Positions 621 through 54,600 of a stretch of DNA of 64,000 nucleotides are shown one piece after another. The position numbers and the translations under genes were made by a program. Under the pieces are notes generated by a model, which made no database searches, had not been told where the DNA came from, and was given only the letters and a program-made list of their open reading frames with translations. How positions within the stretch are numbered: position 1 is the stretch's first letter; every line of letters begins with the position of its first letter. The stretch is from Diadema antillarum (Eukaryota), in the NCBI RefSeq assembly GCF_040938485.1, contig NW_027271384.1:3658001-3722000 (forward strand), written 5' to 3'.

Positions 621-3600
621 CTGTTCAGAAAAGCAGTTGGAAGGTAATTAAAGCACTCTGAATAGTGGCAGCCAGAAGTCCTCACTTCTTCTCGCAACAA
701 AATATACAATTAGCCGCCTACACTACAGATGTATGCCATCTGCCACAAGTAAGCTTAAGGGTTTTTTTCACCTCTCGCATTTATTGCAGACTTCCTTCTA
801 TTTTGGTTTCCTCTTTCAAAACAGTACGGTGTTCATCACATACAAATTAACATGCTCTTTTACCATGCATGACTTGACTGGATCTGTACTCTAACAGCAT
901 AAAAAGAGAACACAAGTACATTTCTACAAAAGAGAGATCACTGGCACTCACAAATGGAGTCCATACACACCTACCAAACACTATCAAAATCTCTTGCAAT
1001 ATTGTGCTTCTTCTAAATATGAGGTACGTTTCCCGTCTACCTTCAGTTTTTCTTCTCGGACAAGATGAGCGGTCGACCAAAGGCTTGAAATACACCGCTC
1101 AGTAAGGCTCATCGCCGCCCCGCGTTCTCTATCTACTACTCAAATGACTTACCTCTGGTGCACTCTCCATTGCTGTAGGTGAAGCCGTCACGACAGTAGC
1201 AGTCTCTCACACCACCCTTGATCCTACACTCCTGGTTCTCCACGCACGCGTATGCCACACATTCCAAAGTGCCTCCAGAACAGCTGCACATCTCGGAGCA
1301 GTCATCGTTCACGTACACATCTCCTGCCTGTTTGTGCCAAAAACCAATCATTTAGATTTGCTTTAGACCATGGTCTTCGTTTCAAGCCATTTGCATCTCC
1401 ATTTGCTTTCAATCCACACGACAATAATCACAGTCTTCAACGTTTTATCAAACTTAAGCTCAAACTTTACCATCAAAGGAGGAAAGCCACACTCACCGAG
1501 ATGTAGCTTCCGTCTGGAAGAGTGCAACCACAATCCTCCGGCTGCACGCATGTTCCACCGTCGTCCAGCAGTCCTTCAGGGCAGCTGCAGATTTCACGGC
1601 AGGGAAGTCCGCAGTTCAGGTCGGCATCTGGATCGGCACAGCTGGGCTGGCAGGCGCTACCGCAAGATTCGTACACTGTTCCAGTCGGACACTCAAACCC
1701 TGAATAAAGACAGTTTTTAGGCAAGGATATACCTTGAACAGCATTTACAACATACAAGAACATACAACAAATGAAATACCCATTCATCACCACGAAAGGT
1801 GTACATTACTTACACCAGATACGATCGGCATCACCCAAAACACAAAGCGCTCACACGAGGCACATCAAGTCAGTACTGTCGTGGACATCCACAGCTGTAC
1901 AGATTTACATTTTTCACACAAAATGCACTACCGTCATTCAGCATCCACACTCTTCTTTCATGACTCCACAATATTTCACTTATTTCTTCCAAACTCACCG
2001 GTCGACTTTCGATGTCTTTCAAAGCCTGCTCACGGCACAGATGGTCATGTCAGACACTCTTGACACGCACTTTGTGATATCTGATCACATGGCTTCATAT
2101 TTTGCACGTCTAGATTCTGATGATCAGCCAAAACAGCTTTCCACTATCCAACAAAAGTGTCATGAAACAAAAATACTTACCGCACTGGAATACAGATGCC
2201 CTCCAGTCCCCAACCAAGATTCCATTTGTTTCTCCTCGACACTTCTGAACGTATTCCTGCAGGGCTCCGCATATGACGTCGTTGTCAGGGTCAGTGAAAC
2301 ACAGGTCGAAGACGCAGGCATCATAGTAATCACTCACGTCCACAAAGTCTGCGCAGCCTCCAAGGGGACCTGAAAGCAAGAAACAGCTGCAAATATAAGC
2401 TCTTGGATACTACACAAACAACAAACAAAGATAAACACACACAAAAAAGAAAACAGACTGAGAAATCCCACTGGACTTTTCTGATCGAGGCGATCAGAAA
2501 TCATCAGACAAATCCTCAGATAGGATGTCCCATACTCTAGATGCTTACCACGCTCATTTTCTAACTTGTACTCTTTCAACGCTTCAATAGATTGCTTTAA
2601 CTTTTTATATATCATATCGACTCCTTAACTCCCACACTATACGAGTACTGTACTGCGCCGCAGTAAAATTCAATCATCTCCATCTGCTCACCGTCTGGAT
2701 TGATGAAGATGTAGCAGATGTCCTCCACTCGTTGCCGCACGTCGGGGTCATCACAGCCATCAACCGGCGGGAGAACAGTGGTATCGCACTCCTCTTCATT
2801 CAGAACCCAGTCATTACCAAAGACATTCTGGAACCGTGTCTGCAAACAGAACCACATTCGTTAACACAATAAATGTAGTCCCTTTTCATCATTTTCTTGG
2901 TACTAAGTTTTGGGTACGGATGGACGATCAGGTCACTGATACATCCATAACACTGATTACGTCAAAGTCCAGTCACATGCGGAACATGTCTCTTTCCTAC
3001 AATCGGATACCCTGATAGACAGGGTATTGAGAAAGGGAGTAAAAAGAGAGCAGAGTTCTACTTACGACACTTCCATCCTGGAGGCGGAAATCGTTGGATC
3101 TGTCGTCATCGAAGGTTCCGCACAGACCACAAGTAGCATTCCAGTACTGGTATGGCACCTCTATGGTTGCAGTGTTGGCTCCGTCGAAACGTACAGACAG
3201 ACCAAAGGATGTTTGGATGGTCTGTAATAACGATCAGATATCAGGTCCTCTTTACCCTTCCCTTCATATCATGCCTCTATGCTCAATTCTAAAACAATTA
3301 CGTATCAAGCGAAAATCTTACATCTTGGCATCATACCTGCAACAAATTTCACTTGATATTTCATTCTTGTGTCTCCTTCAAATATCTGACAATGAAATTA
3401 CTTGGACACTAACATAGATGTTAATACTAGTTACTCTTTTTTTTATTGTATAAATACTAGTGTGCACCTAATCGATCCATTCTCGTAACAGGATACACTT
3501 CGGACATTTTAAATGCCCATACCTCAAAATCTACACCAATTGATGTGTTGACCCACAATCTGGGAGGCTTTCAAGACTAACGAGTAAAGTAGCTTTCATT

Positions 3601-6600
3601 CCCTTACCGCGTAAGACTGGTCCGAGCGAATAGTGACGCCGTTGATGAAGCTCAAGGGTGTCGTCCTCCTTGCACCGTTGACTAGAACCACTCTATTCCG
3701 CTCGATCGAATAGCTAGTGCCATTCACCTCCAGTACCACCTTGCGCAGGTACGACACTCGGTCCGATGGGTTGTTCTTGACGTTGTCTCCCCACAAGTGG
3801 AAATCCACAAGGTCCGTGCGATCGCTGCACGGCCTCACCAGCGTGTACTCACAGTCGCCCTGGAAATCATGACGACCACCGTCGAACATAGTGTAGTGCG
3901 GATCTCCCCACACGGTGCAGATTCCAGGCGCTGTTCAGAAAAGCAGTTGGAAGGTAATTAAAGCACTCTGAATAGTGGCAGCCAGAAGTCCTCACTTCTT
4001 CTCGCAACAAAATATACAGTTAGCCGCCTACACTACAGATGTATGCCATCTGCCACAAGTAAGCTTAAGGGTTTTTTTCACCTCTCGCATTTATTGCAGA
4101 CTTCCTTCTATTTTGGTTTCCTCTTTCAAAACAGTACGGTGTTCATCACATACAAATTAACATGCTCTTTTACCATGCATGACTTGACTGGATCTGTACT
4201 CTAACAGCATAAAAAGAGAACACAAGTACATTTCTACAAAAGAGAGATCACTGGCACTCACAAATGGAGTCCATACACACCTACCAAACACTATCAAAAT
4301 CTCTTGCAATATTGTGCTTCTTCTAAATATGAGGTACGTTTCCCGTCTACCTTCAGTTTTTCTTCTCGGACAAGATGAGCGGTCGACCAAAGGCTTGAAA
4401 TACACCGCTCAGTAAGGCTCATCGCCGCCCCGCGTTCTCTATCTACTACTCAAATGACTTACCTCTGGTGCACTCTCCATTGCTGTAGGTGAAGCCGTCA
4501 CGACAGTAGCAGTCTCTCACACCACCCTTGATCCTACACTCCTGGTTCTCTACGCACGCGTATGCCACACATTCCAAAGTGCCTCCAGAACAGCTGCACA
4601 TTTCGGAGCAGTCATCGTTCACGTACACATCTCCTGCCTGTTTGTGCCAAAAACCAATCATTTAGATTTGCTTCAGACCATGGTCTTCGTTTCAAGCCAT
4701 TTGCATCTCCATTTGCTTTCAATCCACACGACAATAATCACAGTCTTCAACGTTTTATCAAACTTAAGCTCAAACTTTACCATCAAAGGAGGAAAGCCAC
4801 ACTCACCGAGATGTAGCTTCCGTCTGGAAGAGTGCAACCACAATCCTCCGGCTGCACGCATGTTCCACCGTCGTCCAGCAGTCCTTCAGGGCAGCTGCAG
4901 ATTTCACGGCAGGGAAGTCCGCAGTTCAGGTCGGCATCTGGATCGGCACAGCTGGGCTGGCAGGCGCTACCGCAAGATTCGTACACTGTTCCAGTCGGAC
5001 ACTCAAACCCTGAATAAAGACAGTTTTTAGGCAAGGATATACCTTGAACAGCATTTACAACATACAAGAACATACAACAAATGAAATACCCATTCATCAC
5101 CACGAAAGCTGTACATTACTTACACCGGATACGATCGGCATCACCCAAAACACAAAGCGCTCACACGAGGCACATCAAGTCAGTACTGTCGTGGACATCC
5201 ACAGCTGTACAGATTTACATTTTTCACACAAAATGCACTACCGTCATTCAGCATCCGCACTCTTCTTTCATGACTCCACAATATTTCACTTATTTCTTCC
5301 AAACTCACCGGTCGACTTTCGATGTCTTTCAAAGCCTGCTCACGGCACAGATGGTCATGTCAGACACTCTTGACACGCACTTTGTGATATCTGATCACAT
5401 GGCTTCATATTTTGCACGTCTAGATTCTGATGATCAGCCAAAACAGCTTTCCACTATAGAAAAAAAGTGTCATGACACAAAAATACTTACCGCACTGGAA
5501 TACAGATGCCCTCCAGTCCCCAACCAAGATTCCATTTGTTTCTCCTCGACACTTCTGAACGTATTCCTGCAGGGCTCCGCATATGACGTCGTTGTCAGGG
5601 TCAGTGAAACACAGGTCGAAGACGCAGGCATCATAGTAATCACTCACGTCCACAAAGTCTGCGCAGCCTCCAAGGGGACCTGAAAGCAAGAAACAGCTGC
5701 AAATATAAGCTCTTGGATACTACACAAACAACAAACAAAGATAAACACACACAAAAAAGAAAACAGACTGAGAAATCCCACTGGACTTTTCTGATCGAGG
5801 CGATCAGAAATCATCAGACAAATCCTCAGATAGGATGTCCCATACTCTAGATGCTTACCACGCTCATTTTCTAACTTGTACTCTTTCAACGCTTCAATAG
5901 ATTGCTTTAACTTTTTATATATCATATCGACTCCTTAACTCCCACACTATACGAGTACTGTACTGCGCCGCAGTAAAATTCAATCATCTCCATCTGCTCA
6001 CCGTCTGGATTGATGAAGATGTAGCAGATGTCCTCCACTCGTTGCCGCACGTCGGGGTCATCACAGCCATCAACCGGCGGGAGAACAGTGGTATCGCACT
6101 CCTCTTCATTCAGAACCCAGTCATTACCAAAGACATTCTGGAACCGTGTCTGCAAACAGAACCACATTCGTTAACACAATAAATGTAGTCCCTTTTCATC
6201 ATTTTCTTGGTACTAAGTTTTGGGTACGGATGGACGATCAGGTCACTGATACATCCATAACACTGATTACGTCAAAGTCCAGTCACATGCGGAACATGTC
6301 TCTTTCCTACAATCGGATACCCTGATAGACAGGGTATTGAGAAAGGGAGTAAAAAGAGAGCAGAGTTCTACTTACGACACTTCCATCCTGGAGGCGGAAA
6401 TCGTTGGATCTGTCGTCATCGAAGGTTCCGCACAGACCACAAGTAGCATTCCAGTACTGGTATGGCACCTCTATGGTTGCAGTGTTGGCTCCGTCGAAAC
6501 GTACAGACAGACCAAAGGATGTTTGGATGGTCTGTAATAACGATCAGATATCAGGTCCTCTTTACCCTTCCCTTCATATCATGCCTCTATGCTCAATTCT

Positions 6601-9600
6601 AAAACAATTACGTATCAAGCGAAAATCTTACATCTTGGCATCATACCTGCAACAAATTTCACTTGATATTTCATTCTTGTGTCTCCTTCAAATATCTGAC
6701 AATGAAATTACTTGGACACTAACATAGATGTTAATACTAGTTACTCTTTTTTTTATTGTATAAATACTAGTGTGCACCTAATCGATCCATCCTCGTAACA
6801 GGATACACTTCGGACATTTTAAATGCCCATACCTCAAAATCTACACCAATTGATGTGTTGACCCACAATCTGGGAGGCTTTCAAGACTAACGAGTAAAGT
6901 AGCTTTCATTCCCTTACCGCGTAAGACTGGTCCGAGCGAATAGTGACGCCGTTGATGAAGCTCAAGGGTGTCGTCCTCCTTGCACCGTTGACTAGAACCA
7001 CTCTATTCCGCTCGATCGAATAGCTAGTGCCATTCACCTCCAGTACCACCTTGCGCAGGTACGACACTCGGTCCGATGGGTTGTTCTTGACGTTGTCTCC
7101 CCACAAGTGGAAATCCACAAGGTCCGTGCGATCGCTGCACGGCCTCACCAGCGTGTACTCACAGTCGCCCTGGAAGTCATGACGACCACCGTCGAACATA
7201 GTGTAGTGCGGATCTCCCCACACGGTGCAGATTCCAGGCGCTGTTCAGAAAAGCAGTTGGAAGGTAATTAAAGCACTCTGAATAGTGGCAGCCAGAAGTC
7301 CTCACTTCTTCTCGCAACAAAATATACAATTAGCCGCCTACACTACAGATGTATGCCATCTGCCACAAGTAAGCTTAAGGGTTTTTTTCACCTCTCGCAT
7401 TTATTGCAGACTTCCTTCTATTTTGGTTTCCTCTTTCAAAACAGTACGGTGTTCATCACATACAAATTAACATGCTCTTTTACCATGCATGACTTGACTG
7501 GATCTGTACTCTAACAGCATAAAAAGAGAACACAAGTACATTTCTACAAAAGAGAGATCACTGGCACTCACAAATGGAGTCCATACACACCTACCAAACA
7601 CTATCAAAATCTCTTGCAATATTGTGCTTCTTCTAAATATGAGGTACGTTTCCCGTCTACCTTCAGTTTTTCTTCTCGGACAAGATGAGCGGTCGACCAA
7701 AGGCTTGAAATACACCGCTCAGTAAGGCTCATCGCCGCCCCGCGTTCTCTATCTACTACTCAAATGACTTACCTCTGGTGCACTCTCCATTGCTGTAGGT
7801 GAAGCCGTCACGACAGTAGCAGTCTCTCACACCACCCTTGATCCTACACTCCTGGTTCTCCACGCACGCGTATGCCACACATTCCAAAGTGCCTCCAGAA
7901 CAGCTGCACATCTCGGAGCAGTCATCGTTCACGTACACATCTCCTGCCTGTTTGTGCCAAAAACCAATCATTTAGATTTGCTTTAGACCATGGTCTTCGT
8001 TTCAAGCCATTTGCATCTCCATTTGCTTTCAATCCACACGACAATAATCACAGTCTTCAACGTTTTATCAAACTTAAGCTCAAACTTTACCATCAAAGGA
8101 GGAAAGCCACACTCACCGAGATGTAGCTTCCGTCTGGAAGAGTGCAACCACAATCCTCCGGCTGCACGCATGTTCCACCGTCGTCCAGCAGTCCTTCAGG
8201 GCAGCTGCAGATTTCACGGCAGGGAAGTCCGCAGTTCAGGTCGGCATCTGGATCGGCACAGCTGGGCTGGCAGGCGCTACCGCAAGATTCGTACACTGTT
8301 CCAGTCGGACACTCAAACCCTGAATAAAGACAGTTTTTAGGCAAGGATATACCTTGAACAGCATTTACAACATACAAGAACATACAACAAATGAAATACC
8401 CATTCATCACCACGAAAGGTGTACATTACTTACACCAGATACGATCGGCATCACCCAAAACACAAAGCGCTCACACGAGGCACATCAAGTCAGTACTGTC
8501 GTGGACATCCACAGCTGTACAGATTTACATTTTTCACACAAAATGCACTACCGTCATTCAGCATCCGCACTCTTCTTTCATGACTCCACAATATTTCACT
8601 TATTTCTTCCAAACTCACCGGTCGACTTTCGATGTCTTTCAAAGCCTGCTCACGGCACAGATGGTCATGTCAGACACTCTTGACACGCACTTTGTGATAT
8701 CTGATCACATGGCCTCATATTTTGCACGTCTAGATTCTGATGATCAGCCAAAACAGCTTTCCACTATACAACAAAAGTGTCATGACACAAAAATACTTAC
8801 CGCACTGGAATACAGATGCCCTCCAGTCCCCAACCAAGATTCCATTTGTTTCTCCTCGACACTTCTGAACGTATTCCTGCAGGGCTCCGCATATGACGTC
8901 GTTGTCAGGGTCAGTGAAACACAGGTCGAAGACGCAGGCATCATAGTAATCACTCACGTCCACAAAGTCTGCGCAGCCTCCAAGGGGACCTGAAAGCAAG
9001 AAACAGCTGCAAATATAAGCTCTTGGATACTACACAAACAACAAACAAAGATAAACACACACAAAAAAGAAAACAGACTGAGAAATCCCACTGGACTTTT
9101 CTGATCGAGGCGATCAGAAATCATCAGACAAATCCTCAGATAGGATGTCCCATACTCTAGATGCTTACCACGCTCATTTTCTAACTTGTACTCTTTCAAC
9201 GCTTCAATAGATTGCTTTAACTTTTTATATATCATATCGACTCCTTAACTCCCACACTATACGAGTACTGTACTGCGCCGCAGTAAAATTCAATCATCTC
9301 CATCTGCTCACCGTCTGGATTGATGAAGATGTAGCAGATGTCCTCCACTCGTTGCCGCACGTCGGGGTCATCACAGCCATCAACCGGCGGGAGAACAGTG
9401 GTATCGCACTCCTCTTCATTCAGAACCCAGTCATTACCAAAGACATTCTGGAACCGTGTCTGCAAACAGAACCACATTCGTTAACACAATAAATGTAGTC
9501 CCTTTTCATCATTTTCTTGGTACTAAGTTTTGGGTACGGATGGACGATCAGGTCACTGATACATCCATAACACTGATTACGTCAAAGTCCAGTCACATGC

Positions 9601-39600: not shown

Positions 39601-42600
39601 GTACAGACAGACCAAAGGATGTTTGGATGGTCTGTAATAACGATCAGATATCAGGTCCTCTTTACCCTTCCCTTCATATCATGCCTCTATGCTCAATTCT
39701 AAAACAATTACGTATCAAGCGAAAATCTTACATCTTGGCATCATACCTGCAACAAATTTCACTTGATATTTCATTCTTGTGTCTCCTTCAAATATCTGAC
39801 AATGAAATTACTTGGACACTAACATCGATGTTAATACTAGTTACTCTTTTTTTTATTGTATAAATACTAGTGTGCACCTAATCGATCCATCCTCGTAACA
39901 GGATACACTTCGGACATTTTAAATGCCCATACCTCAAAATCTACACCAATTGATGTGTTGACCCACAATCTGGGAGGCTTTCAAGACTAACGAGTAAAGT
40001 AGCTTTCATTCCCTTACCGCGTAAGACTGGTCCGAGCGAATAGTGACGCCGTTGATGAAGCTCAAGGGTGTCGTCCTCCTTGCACCGTTGACTAGAACCA
40101 CTCTATTCCGCTCGATCGAATAGCTAGTGCCATTCACCTCCAGTACCACCTTGCGCAGGTACGACACTCGGTCCGATGGGTTGTTCTTGACGTTGTCTCC
40201 CCACAAGTGGAAATCCACAAGGTCCGTGCGATCGCTGCACGGCCTCACCAGCGTGTACTCACAGTCGCCCTGGAAGTCATGACGACCACCGTCGAACATA
40301 GTGTAGTGCGGATCTCCCCACACGGTGCAGATTCCAGGCGCTGTTCAGAAAAGCAGTTGGAAGGTAATTAAAGCACTCTGAATAGTGGCAGCCAGAAGTC
40401 CTCACTTCTTCTCGCAACAAAATATACAATTAGCCGCCTACACTACAGATGTATGCCATCTGCCACAAGTAAGCTTAAGGGTTTTTTTCACCTCTCGCAT
40501 TTATTGCAGACTTCCTTCTATTTTGGTTTCCTCTTTCAAAACAGTACGGTGTTCATCACATACAAATTAACATGCTCTTTTACCATGCATGACTTGACTG
40601 GATCTGTACTCTAACAGCATAAAAAGAGAACACAAGTACATTTCTACAAAAGAGAGATCACTGGCACTCACAAATGGAGTCCATACACACCTACCAAACA
40701 CTATCAAAATCTCTTGCAATATTGTGCTTCTTCTAAATATGAGGTACGTTTCCCGTCTACCTTCAGTTTTTCTTCTCGGACAAGATGAGCGGTCGACCAA
40801 AGGCTTGAAATACACCGCTCAGTAAGGCTCATCGCCGCCCCGCGTTCTCTATCTACTACTCAAATGACTTACCTCTGGTGCACTCTCCATTGCTGTAGGT
40901 GAAGCCGTCACGACAGTAGCAGTCTCTCACACCACCCTTGATCCTACACTCCTGGTTCTCCACGCACGCGTATGCCACACATTCCAAAGTGCCTCCAGAA
41001 CAGCTGCACATCTCGGAGCAGTCATCGTTCACGTACACATCTCCTGCCTGTTTGTGCCAAAAACCAATCATTTAGATTTGCTTTAGACCATGGTCTTCGT
41101 TTCAAGCCATTTGCATCTCCATTTGCTTTCAATCCACACGACAATAATCACAGTCTTCAACGTTTTATCAAACTTAAGCTCAAACTTTACCATCAAAGGA
41201 GGAAAGCCACACTCACCGAGATGTAGCTTCCGTCTGGAAGAGTGCAACCACAATCCTCCGGCTGCACGCATGTTCCACCGTCGTCCAGCAGTCCTTCAGG
41301 GCAGCTGCAGATTTCACGGCAGGGAAGTCCGCAGTTCAGGTCGGCATCTGGATCGGCACAGCTGGGCTGGCAGGCGCTACCGCAAGATTCGTACACTGTT
41401 CCAGTCGGACACTCAAACCCTGAATAAAGACAGTTTTTAGGCAAGGATATACCTTGAACAGCATTTACAACATACAAGAACATACAACAAATGAAATACC
41501 CATTCATCACCACGAAAGCTGTACATTACTTACACCAGATACGATCGGCATCACCCAAAACACAAAGCGCTCACACGAGGCCCATCAAGTCAGTACTGTC
41601 GTGGACATCCACAGCTGTACAGATTTACATTTTTCACACAAAATGCACTACCGTCATTCAGCATCCGCACTCTTCTTTCATGACTCCACAATATTTCACT
41701 TATTTCTTCCAAACTCACCGGTCGACTTTCGATGTCTTTCAAAGCCTGCTCACGGCACAGATGGTCATGTCAGACACTCTTGACACGCACTTTGTGATAT
41801 CTGATCACATGGCTTCATATTTTGCACGTCTAGATTCTGATGATCAGCCAAAACAGCTTTCCACTATACAACAAAAGTGTCATGACACAAAAATACTTAC
41901 CGCACTGGAATACAGATGCCCTCCAGTCCCCAACCAAGATTCCATTTGTTTCTCCTCGACACTTCTGAACGTATTCCTGCAGGGCTCCGCATATGACGTC
42001 GTTGTCAGGGTCAGTGAAACACAGGTCGAAGACGCAGGCATCATAGTAATCACTCACGTCCACAAAGTCGGAGCAGCCTCCAAGGGGACCTGAAAGCAAG
42101 AAACAGCTGCAAATATAAGCTCTTGGATACTACACAAACAACAAACAAAGATAAACACACACAAAAAAGAAAACAGACTGAGAAATCCCACTGGACTTTT
42201 CTGATCGAGGCGATCAGAAATCATCAGACAAATCCTCAGATAGGATGTCCCATACTCTAGATGCTTACCACGCTCATTTTCTAACTTGTACTCTTTCAAC
42301 GCTTCAATAGATTGCTTTAACTTTTTATATATCATATCGACTCCTTAACTCCCACACTATACGAGTACTGTACTGCGCCGCAGTAAGGCGTGACAGATTT
42401 AATATAGCGAGCGTTCGGCCGCGTGGGGAATGCTCGCGTTCCTCCTTTTGTTAGGGGACGCCCCTATTCCTCCTGCGTGCAGAATGGGGGGTTTAATCCC
42501 TCTATTCATCAGCCTAATGAGGGCGTTCCTTGGACGCAACAGAACGGGCTTGCTCACAAGTCGCATTCATGGCGTTCCTCTCCGCTTTAGGAACGCAAGG

Positions 42601-45600
42601 ATTATCCCAACCACGTGCTTTCCGCGCACGGCTTCACCTTTGAAAAGAACAATTTGCGCCGGCAAGTGCACAATTCACGGTGGACGCCAGAATTCCACAT
42701 CGTTCTTGCAAGTTAAAATAAATCGCGTGGCAAAAACGAGTGAGAGAAATCGCGCACTTCAGACAGTTATACGATTGCGACTCCACATGCTCGCATACGC
42801 TACGGAGTAACATTGCACGAGTTCGCAAAATTCTCACGACTCGCAGTTTCCAAGCGTCATGAACAGGATTGGTATTCCAAAAGTTTTGTCGAAGTTTTGC
42901 GATTATTCACAAGCAATAATTCACGAGCGAGAAGTTGCATTCTGGTTTACTTTTCGATGACATTAGTCAAGGCTCGACACTTACGGGGCCACCAAAAACG
43001 CGCGTCGTGCCACCGAAATTTCAGAAATAAAGATTTTGGTACGATCGGGCCACCAAAAAAGTCGGATGTTTGCCTTTACTTTCGAAAATGAACAGCGGTA
43101 ACAATCGGCTCCGTAAGATGCTAAAATAGATGTCAGATGTTTACTCTTAATTTTGGAAATGAATAACGGTAATATTCGACTCCGTATGATACTAAAATAA
43201 ATGTCGGATGTTTGCTTATACTTTGGGAAATTAATAACGGTAAGAGTCAGCTCCGTACGGTGCTTAAATTAATGTCAGATAATTGATTTTGCCTTTGGAA
43301 ATGAATAAGGATAACATTCCGCTCCGGAAGATGGTGAAATAATTGTCGAATGTTTGCTTTGACGTTCAGAAATGAATAATAATGATATTCAACTCTGTAT
43401 GATGATAAAATAAATTTCTGATGTTTGCTTTTATGTTCGAAAGTAAATAGCAATAACATTCAGCTCCGGAAGATGCTAAAATAAATGTCGAATGTTTCCT
43501 TTGACGTTCGGAAATGAATCAGAGTAATATTCAATTCCGTATGGTGATTAAATAAATGTCGGATATTTGCTTTACTTTCGAAAGTAAATAGCAATCACAT
43601 TCGGCTCCAGAAGATGCCAGAATAAATGTCAGATAATTGCTTTTACTTTTGGAAGTGAATAGCAGTAACATTCTGCTCAATACCATGCTAAAACAAATGT
43701 CGGATTTGTTATTCCACACTGCTCGATTGATAAAAAAAAAAAAACTGTTACGATTCGCTAAAGTTTGTTATTATGCTGAAGGTTCGCTTTTCTTTTTTAT
43801 ACAAGTTTCGAAATTTCGGACGTTATATAGCTGATACGAAAACGAAGTTTCTTACCACGAATATGATAATTTCTTTACAGATAAACGACCCACCTTTTTT
43901 TTTCCATTTTCGGATGAATGAACCATCTGAATATTTTTTTTTTCCCGGAATGATGAATATCGTGCAAAGAAGTAAACGATGTCACGTTCAGAAATAAACC
44001 CATATATTCCCGTCACAGGAAAAGATTCGGCGTTTTTAATTTTCTTTTAGCCAAAAATGACATAAGTTTCGTACCATGCACGTAATTCATTCTCACATTT
44101 ACGAACCTTCGGAATAATGCCGCAAATGGTATTAACGAGCCCTAATACAATTTTGGATTAACACATTACATAAGGCATATCAAATTTGCGTGTTTTGCGG
44201 GTTCAGCAAAAAGAACCATCGGATTTACGAACCTTATTCTTCTTTCGGAATAATGAACATAAGGCAAAGGAAATAACGATGCCATAATAGGAATTCAAAT
44301 TATTTTCTTGCCTCAAAGATTTTCCATACTTATTTTCCGAACTACTAACCCCCAATGCCAGACTAAAAATCCGAAAATTAAATAAGCTCTGCTTTCTGAT
44401 GTTTTGTTAATCCCAGAAATTAAAAGGAACAAGTTGTGTTATTCGTTTTCAGAGTAACGTAATTAATTTAATATCACGATAAATGCACCCTTAGAATCAC
44501 AAAATTCGTGCGGTTTCGGATTAATGAATCGTATTTATTTTTCACATTAACGAATATCAATACGGCAGAGGGAATTTTCGAGAATATTATAGCGAATCTT
44601 ATTTAACTTTCGCATGACAAGAACCTTACAGGTGCAACGAACATCAAAATATAAGAACGATGTCAAACTAAAAATTGAAACTGTATAGTTGCTTCAAGAA
44701 TTTTACCTCCCGTCTATATTGCTTTTCCGATCTAAATCTAAAAATGAAATAAAACAAAACAAAACAAAACACGATGAAACGCGCTATTATTGCCGAACAT
44801 AGAATACATCCCCATAGGTGGAACAAAATAACAACAGAAAAAGATGCAGAGAGAGAATGATGGGCGGGAGAATGGTCTTGGAGGTCGAAGATCTTTTGTG
44901 TGTGTGTGTATGTGTGTGGAATTGAATATTACATGTACATGTTGTGCACAGAAATCTGTCAAAGTCTGTCAAAGTGTGTCAGAGTCACGAGAAATCAAGT
45001 TTTAGTTATGCCTAAATGTGGATTCTACAGACTCTAAAGCTACGTTTACACCATGTTCCCGGCGGCCAAGTTGTATTTGCCTGAGATGCAGTGCGCTGTG
45101 GGTATACTAGTATATGCAGTTGAGACATTCTCCTGTTCCCCCCCCCCCCACCTTCGCATTCTAAGTCTTGTTCGGATCGTTCCAGTCCTCGCCCCGGCGA
45201 ACTTCTATAGCTATCACACGCTGTTCTCACGGCGTCTGATCAGGCTATAGACTATCAATATTTTCCGTCCCGTCCCGCTGCGGACCGCCTCCAAGTTTTG
45301 TTAGGGTCTATTACGTGCCGTCGTGTTTCATTGCATTCATCCCATTTTATCAAGGCATACAAAATTAAATTCCTCATTAGCACCGGGACTGCCGTGGCAA
45401 TTTTTTTTAAACAGTTTAAGAATGTGACACGGCATCCACGGCAATCACGGCCTGTCACATTTGCCTATCTCGTCTCACAGCGTTGTTTCACGTCCGTCCC
45501 ATTTTGTCCGTGATGGCCTGAAATGTGACTGCCGTGGTTGCCGTGAACATGTGTAAACGCGGCTTTTAGCTTTACATAATCCAATTCCACATCCCTTTAA

Positions 45601-48600
45601 ACCTTAAATACGAATATTTGTACGCTATTGTCAGTAGTTCACTTTCTAAAAAGCAAAAACAAACGAACAACCAAACAAACGAACGAACAAGTAAACAAAC
45701 AAAACCATGACAATCTCTTAAAATTCAGGTTCTGTTTCCGTTCAAGCTCACAACCTGATTCTTTCCCTAAACGAAACAATACAGCAGTCGTTCTTTATAG
45801 CGACGCACGACGGCGTTTACGCTCCTCCTCTGTCACTTCATAAGGCGAAAGCATTCTATATGAGGAGTCAAAGAAAATCATCCAATTATAAGACGGTATC
45901 TATCATCGACCAATACGGCAGCCTGATGTGAACTTCGGTGTGTTTGTGTCCGTGCCGTAAAATGAATACGTCGGTGCGCTTTTGTGTGTCGGGTGCATCT
46001 TTAGCAAGGAGCTACAAGTTTTGTTGCTTGTAGCTCCATGGCTGTTATTGCTGCCCCAAAACAAGGGAAGCAGAAGAAAAAGGGCATACCTGCTATTAAG
46101 AAAAGCCTCTTTTAAACGAGGATGTTTCTTGCTGCTATTCCCTTCCGATTGTAAAAACTAAAGAGGGTGCTTTATAAGCAATTATGAATACCTGAATTGA
46201 AAGGACCAGAGGATACCCATTCTGTAGGCGACGTAAAAAGCATAGGAAAGCCAATTGAGACAATTGGTGCTGGTCAGTCGTCTGCCGAGATCATGGTACT
46301 TGCATGTACAACAGTACTATAAACCATCAAAATTAATGTATATACACGAATGTAACATTGATACATATCTTTCTCATAATCTGTCACTTTGAAACACTGC
46401 ATAAAATATGAAGTACCACTGACTTGGTTACTCAACTCAGCATGACATTAAAGCTTTCTAGTATCACATTATTGTGTTACGGGGGGGGGGGGGGGGCGTT
46501 TAATAAATCTGTTTGTACAGTTACGAACAACTTACGAGCGACTGGTGATCAGTTCTGATGTGCTATACTTATCAGAATTTCCATAATTCAGCACAAGAAC
46601 TTATCATCAGTCACTCGTAAGTCGTTCGTATCTTTACGAACAGCTTTATGACCCTCCCCCCCCCCCCCCCTTCACTGCGTTTCAAGCAGTGGGATATAAT
46701 TATATCCTAACAAAATATAATAAGATTAAGGCATTTCGTTTTCTAGTTCACGAACTTTCGGAATAACTTTTTTATTTTGTGTGTGTGTGTGTTCTTGAAT
46801 ATTCATCAAAACGAACTTAATTGCATTCTATGTGATTAACGAAATTTTGGAATAATTAATTGCAGACAGAGATGAAAATGACCGTTACTGTTTCTTGCAT
46901 ATTTCTCAGTTTTTATGTTCACAACGATGTTCCTCGCTTTGTGATTACGTTTGGTCCATCCATCGCGTTTCCCGCAAGCTTGAAAAAGGAGCTAAAATTC
47001 ACGCAAGGAGACGGGTTTTCTTCCACGAGAGACAAATCATTTGTAGAAGATGCACCGTCCTTCCCGCCTGTTATAAAGATAACCTATCATACACTATATA
47101 CGGCTAGCACTGTATGTAGTACTGAAGAAATTTTTCCTGGTGAGAGTCGGTAGACTTATCCGTTCCAAGCGCGGGTAAATTAGTAAGTCTTCTCTCAGGA
47201 CATTAGGTTTTACCCAGAACTTTACGGAATCATCATCTTGCTGACCTATAAGAAAATAAGCCCAAACATTACATTTTGCCAGTTAACAAATAGCCAGGTT
47301 AATTATTGTTGCACAAGTTGTCATTATAATACGCTTTGCAAAAAGTAGGCTTACTTTCAATCTTCACTGATGAGCTCTAAACAGCCCATTATACATAACC
47401 AGGGAAGAGGGATAATTACATTCATAGTTTAAATGAGTTTTCTTAACCCGTTCCTCCCATAATTCTCCAAGAGCCTGAAATGCTCAAAAGCGAGATTCTC
47501 TTTGCAGGTCGACTTGAGAATGGACAGGTTGGTATTCCTCCTGTGCAGAAACAGTCAAGCTGTAGGCCTATTACGACAGTATCCCCTTTCCATGGTCAAC
47601 TACAATACCATGTGCCATCAAACAATGAAAGTATCGATCGGGCACCAGGTATAGGTATGAATAGACATTGCGCTAATGGGCTCACAAACTCTTTTGTTGT
47701 ACACAAGAATATTGTCACTGGAGGCAAGTATCTACTGAGCTGAGCCTCTATCGCTGTGTACATCTTAATTCGAGTTTTATTGCGAAAGAAGCACATATAC
47801 GCGAAGTTAGTAACGGCAATGCACAAAACACAAAAATCTTGAGAGCTTTTGAAAGAGCGGGATCCGAAACATGGACCCGTTTCTAGACACTGTACGTTTT
47901 AAATTTGATATGAAAAAAACAAACGCATATTCCCCAAAGTGCATGCAAATTTGCGATTTAAATTGAAGTGCGTTGCTGTGAAGATATGCGTGTGAATTCG
48001 TATGATTCTGTCGAGATAATTTTTCAGTGCCGACTGAGTTGAAAGAGGATGTGTGATTTTCCTTCCCTAAGTCGCCATATTTTTATTTGTTTTGCTTACA
48101 TTTCTATTGCCATACTCTGAAAATGAATTGTTCTCGCGCTCCGATTCGCAACATTACCGCTCTGTACGGCGCGGGCCAGTCTGAAATAAAAACAAGAAAA
48201 ATTGTTAATCCGGAAACGACATCTTTCGGATTACTAACCTTCGTAAAGATAAACATCTTTCCATCGTCGAACTTATTTAACTTTGGACTGAGATTTAAAC
48301 CTTCGGAATAGCGAACTACAGTAACAATAATTTGCTACTATTTTTTTCATCGACATTTCGTGAAGCACGATGCGTTTCGGTAGTTTGAAACGTGTTAATG
48401 TTGCGATGTCTTTCCCCTGCTAGTGCAGACTAAGTTCAATCATGGCGAAAGTTCCGTTACGAAATAAAAAATGATTCAAGTCTTTTCAACAATAACACGC
48501 TTCGGTTTATAGTTTTTATGCGTTTAAACGCAGTTTTTAGTTTCGTACAAAAACCGCAAGTCTTTTCTGCAACGCTCTTGCGTTTTAGATACAGCGTTGC

Positions 48601-51600
48601 TTGTGATTTGATGGACTTGCATTTGACTATTAGAATTAGTGTTTAAACGCAATTGAGTTTAAGTTTCTTACAATTTTCTAGTGTCGGATGATTATGAAAT
48701 GCAAGTCTTTTCAGCGTTCCGTGTTTGATGGACTTGCATTTGATTTTGGGGGTTGCGTTTAATTCTTAATTTTGCGTAAGAAGTAAAAAATAATGCAGGT
48801 CTTTTCAACAATAACTCACTTCCGTAGATGTTTAGAGATGCGTTTAAACGCAGTTTCTTATAATTTCGTACAAAAAGTATGTCTTTTCTGCAATGCTCTT
48901 GCGTTTAAATACAGCGTTGCGTGTGATTTGATGGACTTGCATTGGATTTTTAGAATCGCGTTGAAATGCAACTGAGTTTTAAAGAAGTTCCCTACAATTT
49001 TCAAGTTTCGTATATCAAACGCAAGTCTATTCAGCGTTCCGCGTGATTACATGGACTTACAATTGCATTTGATTTTCAGAGCTGCGTTTAATTTTTAATT
49101 TTGCATACGAAAAAACAAACAAAATAATGCAAGACTTTTCAACAATAACGCACCTCCGTAGATGTTAAGAGATGCTTTTAAACGCAGTTTCTCTATAGTT
49201 TCTTTACGAAAACCTCAAGTCTTCCCTGCAACGCTCTTGCGTTTGAATACAGCGTTGCGCGTGATTGATGGACTTCATTTAATTTTTAGAGTTGCGTTTC
49301 AACGCAATTGAGTTTCAGGTTCATACAACTATTTTCTAGTTTCATACTATATCAAACGCAAGCCTTTTGGCAGCAACGCACTTGCGTTTATGTGCAAAGT
49401 TGCTCGTGATTTGATACACCTGCATTTAATTTTCAGCTGCATTTAATTACATGTAGTTGCATTTGATTAATTTTCTAAAAACGGGCCCAGGTTTCTATTA
49501 ACGCTTCGGAATAATTAACGTTAGAATATTCGGATAAACAGAAACACCTACACGTGTATTTCATGTTCTGATAATGATTTTCTACTAGGACCTTTATGTG
49601 TACAAAGTTTTTGCGTTTTGAGAATAACGAGCAGAAAAGGGGGAAAGTGAACTGCTTTGGGTAGCCAACTACATGTAATTCTCCAATGTAAATGAATGTA
49701 TGCCCTTTCATTTCTGGCGTACAAGACATGGCGCGAACGCTACCACGCCATACACTAGGGAATTACCGATTAGAAATGCAGCGAATCAGAGCGGGAAAAC
49801 AATTTATTCTTTTTTAAGAGAATGGCGATAAGATTTTGAGCGAAAAATTATGTCGACTTAGACGAGGGAATAAACACGTATTTCAGCTCAGTTGGCACTA
49901 AAAAATCAGGTCGACTTACGCGAGTTGTGGACTTATAAATGTCGACTAAGACGAAGAAATTTTCAAGGAATAACAAGACAAAAATCGGGACTTTTTTATC
50001 GTGTCGACTTAAGCAATGTCGAGGTTTACTGTACTAAAGCTCCATAGTTTCAGCAGAGCCAGATGTGTATGTACCTCCCTGGTTTCAGGAAGGAGGTACT
50101 AGGCGAGCTCGCCTGGTACCTCCTTGGTTTCAGGTGCAGGGAGCTCTCATCAGCTAGCTCTCGCCAACTACAGCACGTGTCTCCAACAGCATGCACGTAT
50201 CACACACAGCACAGGGTTACTAATACATGTACTATACATAGCCCCTCTTCCCTCCCAGGCCCCATGCAATTGACACGATGTTTACGACCCATTCAGCGCG
50301 TACGCAAATTAATTTACCCTGCGGTTTTTGCCTGGCGGCAAACCTGCTTTGAAGTTCCTGGAAATTTCCACCAGCTTGTTGCCTGGCTGGCACGGCCATG
50401 GGTGTCAAGTTTCCGTCAATCTACCTAGCTATTGTGAGTGTTTTTCTTATACACTTGTCACTTCATTACACACATTTTGCTTCACCTGAGAAGCTGCTTA
50501 CAAGAGTGGTCTCACGCTCATGTAAGGGGAACAAATACTATATTTCGGATACTATTTCAGATACTTCTTGATTACGCCTCTCATCGACGCAAATTAAGGT
50601 AATCACAGCGTTACTAACGCGTAATAGTGCAATGCCTTTCGTGGTTTCATTTGTTTGCTAGTTTGTCCGTTTTTTAAGCTTCCATGAAATCAACTGTGTA
50701 AGTGTTAAGCACAAGACAAAGGGAAGACTTAATCCGGGCGTTCCCGAACGCTGGCTACATGGAGCGATGGCTTCGTGGTCGATTGGGTGCAGTGAAGTTG
50801 ACGCTATTGTGTTCGAAACAAAGGCACTAAACAAAAGACTTTTAAGCTGGCGTTCCCGGAACGCGGACGGCATGGGCGCATGCCAAGCTCGTGCCAAGCT
50901 GGCTACTTAACAGATAAGAAGGCATGTCGGACGCGGGCGAACGCTCGTGAGATAAAATCTGTCACGCCTAAAATTCAATCATCTCCATCTGCTCACCGTC
51001 TGGATTGATGAAGATGTAGCAGATGTCCTCCACTCGTTGCCGCACGTCGGGGTCATCACAGCCATCAACCGGCGGGAGAACAGTGGTATCGCACTCCTCT
51101 TCATTCAGAACCCAGTCATTACCAAAGACATTCTGGAACCGTGTCTGCAAACAGAACCACATTCGTTAACACAATAAATGTAGTCCCTTTTCATCATTTT
51201 CTTGGTACTAAGTTTTGGGTACGGATGGACGATCAGGTCACTGATACATCCATAACACTGATTACGTCAAAGTCCAGTCACATGCGGAACATGTCTCTTT
51301 CCTACAATCGGATACCCTGATAGACAGGGTATTGAGAAAGGGAGTAAAAAGAGAGCAGAGTTCTACTTACGACACTTCCATCCTGGAGGCGGAAATCGTT
51401 GGATCTGTCGTCATCGAAGGTTCCGCACAGACCACAAGTAGCATTCCAGTACTGGTATGGCACCTCTATGGTTGCAGTGTTGGCTCCGTCGAAACGTACA
51501 GACAGACCAAAGGATGTTTGGATGGTCTGTAATAACGATCAGATATCAGGTCCTCTTTACCCTTCCCTTCATATCATGCCTCTATGCTCAATTCTAAAAC

Positions 51601-54600
51601 AATTACGTATCAAGCGAAAATCTTACATCTTGGCATCATACCTGCAACAAATTTCACTTGATATTTCATTCTTGTGTCTCCTTCAAATATCTGACAATGA
51701 AATTACTTGGACACTAACATAGATGTTAATACTAGTTACTCTTTTTTTTATTGTATAAATACTAGTGTGCACCTAATCGATCCATCCTCGTAACAAGATA
51801 CACTTTGCACATATTAAATGCCCCTACATCAAAATCAATATCAATTGATGTGCTGACCCACAATTTGGGAGGCTTTCAAGACTAACGAGTAAACCAGCCA
51901 TCATTCCCTTACCGCGTAAGACCGGTCCGAGCGAATAGTGATGCCGTTGATGAAGCTCAAGGGTGTCGTCCGCCTTGCACCGTTGACTAGAACCACTCTA
52001 TTCCGCTCGATCGAATAGCTAGTGCCATTCACCTCCAGTACCACCTTGCGCAGGTACGACACTCGGTCCGATGGGTTGTTCTTGACGTTGTCTCCCCACA
52101 AGTGGAAATCCACAAGGTCCGTGCGGTCGCTGCACGGCCTCACCAGCGTGTACTCACAGTCGCCCTGGAAGTCATGACGACCACCGTCGAACATAGTGTA
52201 GTGCGGATCTCCCCACACGGTGCAGATTCCAGGCGCTGTTCAGAGAAGCAGTCGGAAGGTAATTAAAGCACTCTGAATAGTGGCAGCCAGAAGCCCTCAC
52301 TTCTTCTCCCAACAAAATATACAATTGGCCGCCTACACTACAGATGTCTGCCATCTGCCACAAGTAAGCTTAACGGTTTTTTTCACCTCTCGCATTTCTT
52401 GCAGACTTCCTTCTATTTTAATTGGTTTCCTCTTTCAAAACAGTACGGTGTTCATCACATACAAAAGTACATGCTCTTTTACCATGCATGACCTGACTGG
52501 ATCTTGTACTCTAACAGCATAAAAAGAGAACACATGCAAGTACATTTCCACAAAAGAGAGATCACTGGCACTCACAAATGGAGTCCATACACACCTACCA
52601 AACACTATCAAAATCTCTTGCAATATTGTGCTTCTTCAAAATATGAGGTTTCCCGTCTACCTTCAGTTTTTCTTCTCAGACAAGATGAGCAGTCGACCAA
52701 AGGCTTGAAATACACAGCTCAGTAAGGCTCATCGCCGCCCCGCGTTCTCTATCTATTACTCAAATGACTTACCTCTGGTGCATTCTCCATTGCTGTAGGT
52801 GAAGCCGTCCCGACAGTAGCAGTCTCTCACACCACCCTTGATCCTACACTCCTGGTTCTCCACGCACGCGTATGCCACACATTCCAAAGTGCCTCCAGAA
52901 CAGCTGCACATCTCGGAGCAGTCATCGTTCACGTACACATCCCCTGCCTGTTTGTGCCAATACCAATCATTTAGATTTGCTTTAGACCATGGTCTTCTTT
53001 TCAAGCCATTTGCATCTCCATTTGCTTTCAATCCACACGACAATAATCACAGTGTTCAACGATTTATTAAACTTAAGCTCAAATATTACCATCAAAGGAG
53101 GAAAGCCACACTCACCGAGATGTAGCTTCCGTCTGGAAGAGTGCAACCACAATCCTCTGGCTGCACGCATGTTCCGCCGTCGTCCAGCAGTCCTTCGGGG
53201 CAGCTGCAGATTTCACGGCAGGGAAGTCCGCAGTTCAGGTCGGAATCTGGATCGGCACAGCTGGGCTGGCAGGCGCTACCGCAAGATTCGTACACTGTTC
53301 CACTCGGACACTCAAACCCTGAATAAAGACAATTTTTAGGCAAGGATATACCTTGAACGTCATTTACAACGTACAAGAACATACAACAAGTGAAATACCC
53401 ATTCATCACCACGAAAGCTGTACATTACTTACACCGGATACGATCGGCATCACCAAGAACACAAAGTGCTCACACGAGTCATATAAAGTCAGTACTGTCG
53501 GGGACATTCACAACTGTACAGATTTACAGTTTTCACGCAAAATGCACTACCGTCATTCAGCATCTGCACTCTTCTTTCATGACTCCACAATATTTCACTT
53601 ATTTCTTCCAAACCCACCGAAAGACTTTCGACGTCTTTCAAAAGCTGCATCTCATCCTCACGGCACAGAGGGTCATGTCAGAGACTCTTGACACGCACTT
53701 CATGATATCTGATCACATGGCTTTATTTTTTGCACCTCTAGATTCTGATGATCAGCCAAAACAGCTTTCCACTATACAACATAAGTGTCATGACACAAAA
53801 ATACTTACCGCACTGGATTACAGACGCCCTCCAGTCCCCAGCCAAGATGCCATTTGTTTCTCCTCGACACTTCTGAACGTATTCCTGCAGGGCTCCGCAT
53901 ATGATGTCGTTGTCAGGGTCAGTGAAACACAGGTCGAAGACGCAGGCATCATAGTAATCACTCACGTCCACAAAGTCGGAGCAGCCTCCCAGGGGACCTG
54001 AAAGCAAGAAACAGCTGCAAATATAAGCTCTTGGATACTACACAAACAACAAACAAAAATACACACACAGAAAAAAGAAAAGAGACTGAGAAATTCCACT
54101 GCACTTTTCTATTCGAGGTGATTAGAAATCATCAGACAAATAGTCAGATAGGATGTACCATACTCCAGCTGCTTACCACGCTCATTTTCAAATTTGCCCT
54201 CTTTTAATGCTTCAATAGATTGCTTTAACTTTTTGCATATCATATCGACTCATCTACTCATAGAATACACGAGTACTGTAGTGTGCCTCAGTGAAATTCA
54301 ATCATCTCCATCTTCTCACCGTCAGGATTGATGAAGATGTAGCAGATGTCCTCCACACGTTGCTGCACGTCGGGGTCATCACAGCCATCAGGGGGCGGGA
54401 GAATTGTGGTATCGCACTCCTCTTCATTCAGAACCCAGTCATTACCAAAGACATTCTGGTACGGTGTCTGCAAACAGGACCACATTCGTCAACACAATAA
54501 TTGGTACTTTTGGGTACAGCTGCACGATCAGGTCACTGTTACATCCACAACACTGATTACATCAAAGTCCAGTCACATGCGGAACATGTCTCTTTCCTAC

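What the first reader, a model, noticed from the sequence alone, without database searches (positions are those of the whole stretch)
42384..50971. 8.6-kb PIF/Harbinger-like element inserted 25 nt from a splice donor in just one unit
Seen: exact TAA TSD and 38-bp TIRs. It sits 25 nt into the D-E intron (donor at 50996), enlarging the intron from 322 to 8907 nt, and the empty site is visible in 12 sister units. Flanks on both sides are still identical to the L consensus, so the insertion is young, yet the interior is a patchwork of old degenerate repeats with no transposase. Known: autonomous Harbingers encode a DDE transposase plus a Myb/SANT-like protein; non-autonomous ones are usually short. 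Inference: an unusually large non-autonomous cargo-carrying element mobilised in trans, which may perturb splicing of this module.
Basis: partly seen in the sequence, partly recalled or inferred. Interest (0 to 1): 0.7.

Follow-up and report, generated by a model that had tools for sequence, protein, structure and literature searches.

The report
Young gene-less Harbinger-type transposon in an intron
This is a real, very recent insertion of an 8.6-kb jumping gene that encodes no enzyme of its own, one of about 54 near-identical copies in the sea urchin Diadema antillarum; it is large for its kind but belongs to a well-known kind.

Summary
Window 42387-50968 (8582 bp) is bounded by imperfect terminal inverted repeats. 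They match at 33 of 38 positions, and the first 14 nt match exactly. The element is flanked by an exact TAA duplication. It lies 25 nt inside an intron of a tandem VWD-C8-TIL-TILa (FCGBP-like) gene on the minus strand. Twelve sister units carry the exact empty site.

New here:
- The genome holds 54 complete copies, 7.2-13.7 kb long, 36 of them 8.1-8.9 kb. The assembly is the uncollapsed diploid D. antillarum assembly.
- Ten full copies differ by 0.58% on average, and 175 of 203 variable sites are singletons, so the family expanded in one recent burst.
- 25 of 26 junctions read are TTA or TAA, and seven copies show the same triplet on both sides. This is the PIF/Harbinger target signature.
- One other copy has a clean empty allele on the second haplotype. 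The contig that looks like the second haplotype of this gene array carries no copy either.
- No transposase, MADF or other domain was found in the 150 longest open frames. No Rfam family or tRNA matched.

The element is therefore non-autonomous. "Cargo" is not supported. It is a new member of a known kind.

The parts
42384..42386 (.). Left copy of the 3-bp target-site duplication (TAA)
   Evidence: Sister units have a single TAA at this place.
42387..50968 (+). Whole non-autonomous element, 8582 bp. The + orientation is an arbitrary 'left to right' choice. The host gene reads through it from right to left.
   Evidence: Full-length matches at 98-99% at ten or more other loci. 54 left/right end pairs in the genome.
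42387..42433 (+). Left terminal inverted repeat. The first 14 nt are GGCGTGACAGATTT.
50922..50968 (-). Right terminal inverted repeat
50969..50971 (.). Right copy of the target-site duplication (TAA)
43057..43705 (.). Subterminal tandem array of 71-bp units, 9.2 copies, 72% matches
46482..46670 (.). 189-bp palindrome. Arms are 75 nt and 84% complementary, with G16 and C16 runs.
   Evidence: It also appears as a reverse self-match in every copy.
48466..49322 (.). Tandem repeat of 320-bp units, 2.6 copies, 79% matches
45795..46370 (.). Segment (element positions 3409-3984) missing from a transposing deletion subfamily on C198, C282 and C913
   Evidence: The deletion junction shows microhomology TTCT and no TIR or duplication.
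46736..46985 (.). Second segment (element positions 4350-4599) missing from the same deletion subfamily
49450..49858 (.). Segment (element positions 7064-7472) missing from the C187 copy (8215 bp). Several other copies of about 8.2 kb may share this deletion, but that is judged from size only.
   Evidence: Sizes.
50997..51144 (-). Host exon upstream of the interrupted intron. Its donor GT is at 50996-50995. The upstream exon boundary is inferred from the AG and the open frame.
   Evidence: Frame continuity into the C8 exon read directly.
41830..42089 (-). Host exon downstream of the interrupted intron (C8 domain). Its acceptor AG is at 42091-42090.
   Evidence: Pfam C8, E = 4.6e-15.

Best explanation
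Window 42387-50968 is one recently inserted copy of a non-coding, non-autonomous DNA transposon family of the PIF/Harbinger type in Diadema antillarum.

A transposase made elsewhere in the genome recognised the terminal inverted repeats. By inference it acted with its DNA-binding partner protein and perhaps through the GCGTTCC motifs clustered near both ends. It cut the 8.6-kb element out of another site and pasted it into a TAA. That TAA lies 25 nt inside an intron of an FCGBP-like gene, and the insertion duplicated it.

The insertion came after the 3310-bp exon cassettes were homogenised. It is probably present on only one of the two haplotypes. It lengthens the intron from 322 to 8907 nt and leaves both splice sites and the reading frame intact.

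What is shown: the element's structure, its family, its target specificity, its youth, its lack of coding capacity, and presence/absence polymorphism at another copy.

What is inferred: which enzyme moves it, what the subterminal motifs do, and any effect on the host transcript.
For: - Ends and duplication.
- Empty site: 12 paralogous empty sites.
- Family size: 142 hits of the 14-nt terminus against 1 for the control. There are 65 left ends and 55 right ends, giving 54 pairs of 7.2-13.7 kb. Full-length identity is 98-99%.
- Target site: 25 of 26 junctions are TTA or TAA. Seven copies, counting the window copy and a split one, show matching triplets on both sides. TWA is the stated PIF/Harbinger target (PMC13668399).
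- Burst: ten full copies have a mean pairwise distance of 0.58%, and 175 of 203 variable sites are singletons.
- Empty allele of another copy: the two flanks of the C1291 copy abut at C1936:172316-172319, sharing one TTA. No family end lies on C1936.
- This locus: the probable second haplotype of the array (C616) has no family end.
- No coding capacity: the 150 longest frames (33 aa or more) give only chance-level Pfam hits. The longest frame is 135 aa against 116 +/- 18 in shuffles. No Rfam family or tRNA matched.
- Possible enzyme sources exist: at least 151 DDE_Tnp_4 matches, many with open frames of 438-577 aa, several lying 3-5 kb from MADF matches.
- Derivatives: internal deletions with microhomology, as in abortive gap repair.
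- Subterminal motifs: 7 of 9 GCGTTCC motifs lie within 400 nt of the ends.
Against: - No autonomous element with these termini was found. None of the 150 best DDE_Tnp_4 loci or the 37 MADF loci lies between any pair of these termini.
- Only 150 of 531 transposase candidates were scored.
- Superfamily assignment therefore rests on the target duplication and the general form of the ends, not on a linked transposase.
- Hemizygosity of this particular copy rests on taking C616 for the allelic contig. I could not check that with unique flanks, because the whole window lies inside the array.
Confidence: 0.8

Rival explanations
1. It is a non-autonomous TIR transposon of a different superfamily that also makes 3-bp duplications (CACTA/EnSpm, Zator or Academ-like), not PIF/Harbinger.
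For: No linked DDE_Tnp_4 or MADF gene was found for these termini. Membership therefore rests on indirect features.
Against: The duplication is sequence-specific: 25 of 26 junctions are TWA. The termini begin GGCGTG, not CACTA/CACTG. By general knowledge, the other superfamilies with 3-bp duplications are not known to select TWA targets.
Confidence: 0.1
2. It is autonomous after all. Its transposase would be split into many small exons, as in the intron-rich giant Harbingers that other notes of this scan report for this genome.
For: Earlier notes describe 17-kb Harbingers in this genome that are 70% intron (not checked by me). Exons shorter than 33 aa were not scanned.
Against: The 150 longest stop-to-stop frames give no TE domain. 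They produced 9 hits at E <= 0.05 where about 7.5 are expected by chance. The whole-genome DDE_Tnp_4 and MADF searches, which match exon by exon, hit none of the roughly 54 copies. Frame lengths are as in shuffled sequence.
Confidence: 0.05
3. It is a composite: two short MITEs that mobilise the genomic DNA caught between them (macro-transposition). The interior would then be captured host sequence.
For: The interior is large and heterogeneous. First-look candidate counts of 1429-2004 for interior pieces suggest that parts of it are repeated elsewhere. Element positions 3410-4243 occur outside the element at 92% identity.
Against: Each end carries only one copy of the terminus. There are no internal inverted partners within 1 mismatch. 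All copies share the same complete interior. No MITE-sized relatives with these left and right ends exist.
Confidence: 0.05

Closest known systems
Non-autonomous PIF/Harbinger elements, for example the MtPH deletion derivatives of Medicago truncatula (PMC2213677)
   Same: Both have TIRs and a 3-bp duplication, and lack a transposase. Mobility is shown by empty related sites. Both form internal-deletion derivatives consistent with abortive gap repair. Both carry subterminal tandem repeats: about 60 bp there, 71 bp here.
   Different: The elements of the one subfamily whose lengths I read there span 442-4048 bp and are traceable to a coding master element. This family is 8.6 kb, has no recognisable remnant of either gene, and no master was found.
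Tourist/mPing-type MITEs mobilised by PIF/Ping/Pong
   Same: Both are non-coding, prefer a TWA target, are mobilised in trans, and expanded recently as near-identical copies.
   Different: MITEs are a few hundred bp long and often occur in hundreds to thousands of copies. This family is about 20 times longer, has about 54 copies in a diploid assembly, and has no short derivatives.
Harbinger-1M_cIno family of Caenorhabditis inopinata (PMC13668399)
   Same: Both are young PIF/Harbinger families without a transposase. Both were found through a gene insertion and surveyed genome-wide by their terminal motif. Both have TTA/TAA duplications.
   Different: That element is 1.63 kb and keeps the MADF gene. 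The element here keeps no gene.
Giant (about 17 kb) autonomous Harbingers noted elsewhere in this genome by this scan (s1-224558, s1-217798)
   Same: Same genome. In both cases a large body moves as one unit and forms a young multi-copy family.
   Different: Those are reported to carry both genes, and one uses a CWG target. This one is gene-less and uses TWA. I did not check those reports.

Membership tests
PIF/Harbinger superfamily | 3-bp target-site duplication at a TWA target | tested here: met
   25 of 26 junctions are TTA or TAA and one is CTA. Seven copies have identical triplets on both sides. One empty allele holds a single TTA.
PIF/Harbinger superfamily | Terminal inverted repeats recognised by the transposase | tested here: met
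   The arms are 48 nt at 81% complementarity, with the first 14 nt perfect. The terminus is conserved in 142 genome sites against 1 for the control.
PIF/Harbinger superfamily | An autonomous relative with the same termini that encodes a DDE_Tnp_4-type transposase and a Myb/MADF partner | tested here: inconclusive
   None of the 150 best PF13359 loci or the 37 PF10545 loci lies inside any pair of these termini. Only 150 of 531 transposase candidates were scored. Relatives of 4.4-6.8 kb that share the terminus could not be read.
Autonomous PIF/Harbinger element | Own transposase and partner gene inside the element | tested here: not met
   There is no TE domain in the 150 longest frames. Frame lengths match shuffled sequence.
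MITE | Small size (well under 1 kb) and high copy number | tested here: not met
   The element is 8582 bp. The 54 paired copies are all 7.2 kb or longer.
CACTA/EnSpm | Termini CACTA/CACTG with a 3-bp duplication that is not sequence-specific | tested here: not met
   The termini begin GGCGTGACAG. The duplication is TWA-specific.
Gene-capturing (Pack-type) transposon | Fragments of host genes inside the element | tested here: inconclusive
   No protein domain, Rfam family or tRNA was found inside. Donor loci could not be searched for, because family copies fill all the scored places.

The most novel reading that the evidence does not exclude
The family is an orphan: a large, wholly non-coding Harbinger-type element with no autonomous relative that shares its termini. 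On this reading, the full 8-kb body is kept in nearly every copy because internal sequence is needed in cis. That sequence could be the subterminal arrays or motifs, or a non-coding transcript. The alternative is simply that the family is too young to have decayed. Efficient movement would then depend on more than the ends, and a Harbinger enzyme would cross-mobilise a very large unrelated substrate.
Probability: 0.1. Interest if true: 0.5.

Novelty: new member of a known kind. Interest (0 to 1): 0.3.

Why it matters
This is a clean, datable example of current DNA-transposon activity in a keystone reef urchin. The family is young, polymorphic and 8.6 kb long, which shows that Harbinger-type machinery in this genome moves very large gene-less substrates. 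The insertion also marks one cassette in an otherwise almost uniform exon-cassette array. It could therefore serve as a physical landmark for copy-number and haplotype studies of that FCGBP-like gene. It is also a natural test of how a 28-fold longer intron affects splicing of a repeated module. None of this changes what is known about the superfamily.

Tried and rejected
I did not try to get those letters by another route. As a result, nine copies have only one junction read.
There is no RNA or DNA read evidence.
- Rfam and tRNA scans of the element found nothing.
- Pfam on the 20 longest frames, then on the 150 longest through an alignment container, gave only chance-level hits.
- Cross-referencing genome-wide DDE_Tnp_4 and MADF places with all terminus places found no co-location.
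- Earlier scan notes searched by sequence and by words gave nothing on this family.
- The idea that the shorter subfamily is ancestral, with the extra 576-bp and 250-bp segments as nested insertions, was rejected. The junctions show microhomology and no TIR or duplication.
- The composite-of-two-MITEs idea was rejected.
- Interior pieces searched alone returned only family copies among the scored places. Matches outside the family could therefore not be seen.
Exons were scanned one at a time by reference.
Full report
**What is there**

The window is almost entirely a tandem array on the minus strand. Each 3310-bp unit encodes VWD, C8, TIL and TILa pieces (Pfam; frames).

At 42387-50968 one unit is interrupted by 8582 bp of lower G+C, 0.37-0.40 against about 0.45 in the units.

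The two ends are inverted repeats. The tool reports arms of 48 nt at 81% complementarity. By direct count 33 of the first 38 positions match and the first 14 (GGCGTGACAGATTT) are identical. That 14-mer occurs nowhere else in the window.

TAA stands on both sides, at 42384-42386 and 50969-50971. The two flanks joined over a single TAA occur in 12 sister units, 11 exact and one with a single mismatch. Shuffled sequence gave none.

**Relation to the host gene**

- On the minus strand the upstream exon ends at 50997 and is followed by GTGAGC. The duplication starts 25 nt further in.
- The acceptor is a pyrimidine tract followed by CAG at 42091-42090, and the next exon starts at 42089.
- The frame runs ...INPD, then a glycine codon split by the intron, then PLGGCSDF. 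That is the start of the C8 match.
- The intron is 8907 nt here and 322 nt in sister units. Both splice sites and the tract are untouched.
- The flanks have 0-2 mismatches per 500 bp against sister units. The right flank stays identical for 827 bp, to 51795, and then diverges.
- Units further right are only 92-95% identical. The filled unit is therefore the last one of the homogenised block. Sister units differ from each other by 1-14 positions in 3310.

**The genome**

G000 has 1,754,659,819 bases. That is exactly the size given for GCA_040938485.1, the uncollapsed initial assembly of Diadema antillarum. That assembly retains both haplotypes and the species shows 2.52% heterozygosity (PMC13511894). 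Copy numbers below therefore count two haplotypes.

**The family**

- The whole element matches ten or more other loci end to end at 98-99%, and further loci with internal deletions.
- The terminal 14-mer occurs 142 times, against 1 for the reversed control.
- A left-end 27-mer finds 65 sites and a right-end 27-mer finds 55. They form 54 pairs on the same contig in the right orientation, plus one split copy.
- Pair sizes run from 7209 to 13696 bp, and 36 of the 54 lie between 8.1 and 8.9 kb. There are no short derivatives.
- Ten full copies have a mean pairwise distance of 0.58% (range 0.13-0.97%). 175 of 203 variable sites are singletons, which is a star-like recent burst.
- CpG is not depleted: observed/expected is 1.21 in the element and 0.80 in the host units.

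**Target site and mobility**

I could read 17 left and 9 right junctions. Twenty-five are TTA or TAA and one is CTA. The window copy and six others have the same triplet on both sides. They represent 17 different insertion sites. TWA is the characteristic PIF/Harbinger target (PMC13668399).

One other copy gives direct evidence of presence/absence. Its two flanks (C1291) match contig C1936 at 98-99%. They meet at 172316-172319, overlapping by the triplet. C1936 carries no family end.

For the window copy, a second array on C616:1716624-1768152 is most likely the other haplotype. It also carries no family end. This makes the insertion probably hemizygous. I could not confirm that C616 is allelic.

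**Coding capacity**

- The longest stop-to-stop frame is 135 aa, against 116 +/- 18 in shuffles.
- The 20 longest frames have no Pfam match better than E = 0.078.
- The 150 longest frames (33 aa or more), scanned one by one, gave nine unrelated families at E <= 0.05, where about 7.5 are expected by chance. None was a transposase, MADF, Myb or THAP domain.
- No Rfam family and no tRNA matched.

The element is therefore non-autonomous, and nothing identifiable as cargo is inside.

**Interior**

- A 71-bp tandem array near the left end and a 320-bp repeat.
- A 189-bp palindrome with G16 and C16 runs, and a smaller one.
- Seven of the nine GCGTTCC motifs lie within 400 nt of the ends. They are candidates for protein binding; this is inference only.
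- Element positions 3410-4243 also occur outside the family at 92% identity, so at least that part is a separate repeat.
- A subfamily on C198, C282 and C913 lacks positions 3409-3984 and 4350-4599. The junctions show microhomology and no TIR or duplication, so these are true deletions of the kind expected from interrupted gap repair (model as in PMC2213677).

**The helper**

The genome has at least 151 DDE_Tnp_4 matches, many in open frames of 438-577 aa. Several lie 3-5 kb from MADF matches. Intact two-gene Harbingers therefore exist. None of these places lies between any pair of the family's termini.

Related elements share the first 14-27 nt: 4.4 kb on C458 and C732, 6.2 kb on C631, and 6.76 kb on C241 and C1868. 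They contain none of the listed transposase or MADF places.

The helper is unidentified, and membership in the superfamily rests on the target site and the form of the ends.

**Not tested**

In the gene's sense the element holds 5 AATAAA and 5 GTRAGT motifs. Premature ends or cryptic splicing are possible but unshown.

**Verdict**

This is a young, probably hemizygous copy of a large, gene-less PIF/Harbinger-type family. It is a new member of a known kind and of modest interest.

Noticed in passing
G000 C104:1794166-1802713 / 3677762-3686310 and C104:1978665-1987531 / 3492952-3501812; also C198:1537664-1545411 / 2210512-2219129: Family copies on contig C104 sit in mirror-image pairs. Both pairs share the same midpoint, about 2,740,238. 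C198 shows one such pair, with flanks 99.7% identical over 1.5 kb. These contigs look like giant palindromes. Most likely the two haplotypes were joined head to head by the assembler.
   Followed up: partly
L008 (C198:2210512-2219129) versus L019/L016 (C198:1537664-1545411): The same insertion site holds a full-length copy on one side and the doubly deleted variant on the other. The flank is 99.7% identical and both have a TTA duplication. That same variant also sits at unrelated loci (C282, C913). This suggests repair or conversion from an ectopic copy, or reinsertion at the same site.
   Followed up: partly
G000 C699:489093-494147 (-) and C699:561500-564895 (+); loci L014, L022, L027: One copy is split at element positions 5034-5038. 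Its two halves lie 67 kb apart in opposite orientation, each outer end still flanked by TAA. This fits a roughly 72-kb inversion with one breakpoint inside the element, or an assembly error.
   Followed up: no
window 50969-51796: The filled cassette is the last unit of the homogenised block. Identity to the 12 sister units is perfect for 827 bp right of the insertion and breaks sharply at 51796. Units beyond that point are 92-95% identical.
   Followed up: partly
L012 and L013 (C1023:25906-35130, C594:1618422-1627637), element position 6083: A 1006-bp insertion with short inverted ends (ATGCCTCCGC) sits inside this copy on both haplotype contigs. Other copies are enlarged to 11.8-13.7 kb (C88, C312, C766, C877, C1127), presumably by nested insertions.
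   Followed up: no
G000 C616:1716624-1768152: This second array of the same cassettes is probably the other haplotype. Among the scored matches it shows 11 units of the homogenised type, against 13 empty plus 1 filled on C496. That would be a copy-number difference between haplotypes, if the counts are complete.
   Followed up: no
window 42387-50968: CpG observed/expected is 1.21 in the element and 0.80 in the surrounding gene units. The element shows no sign of methylation-driven CpG decay.
   Followed up: no
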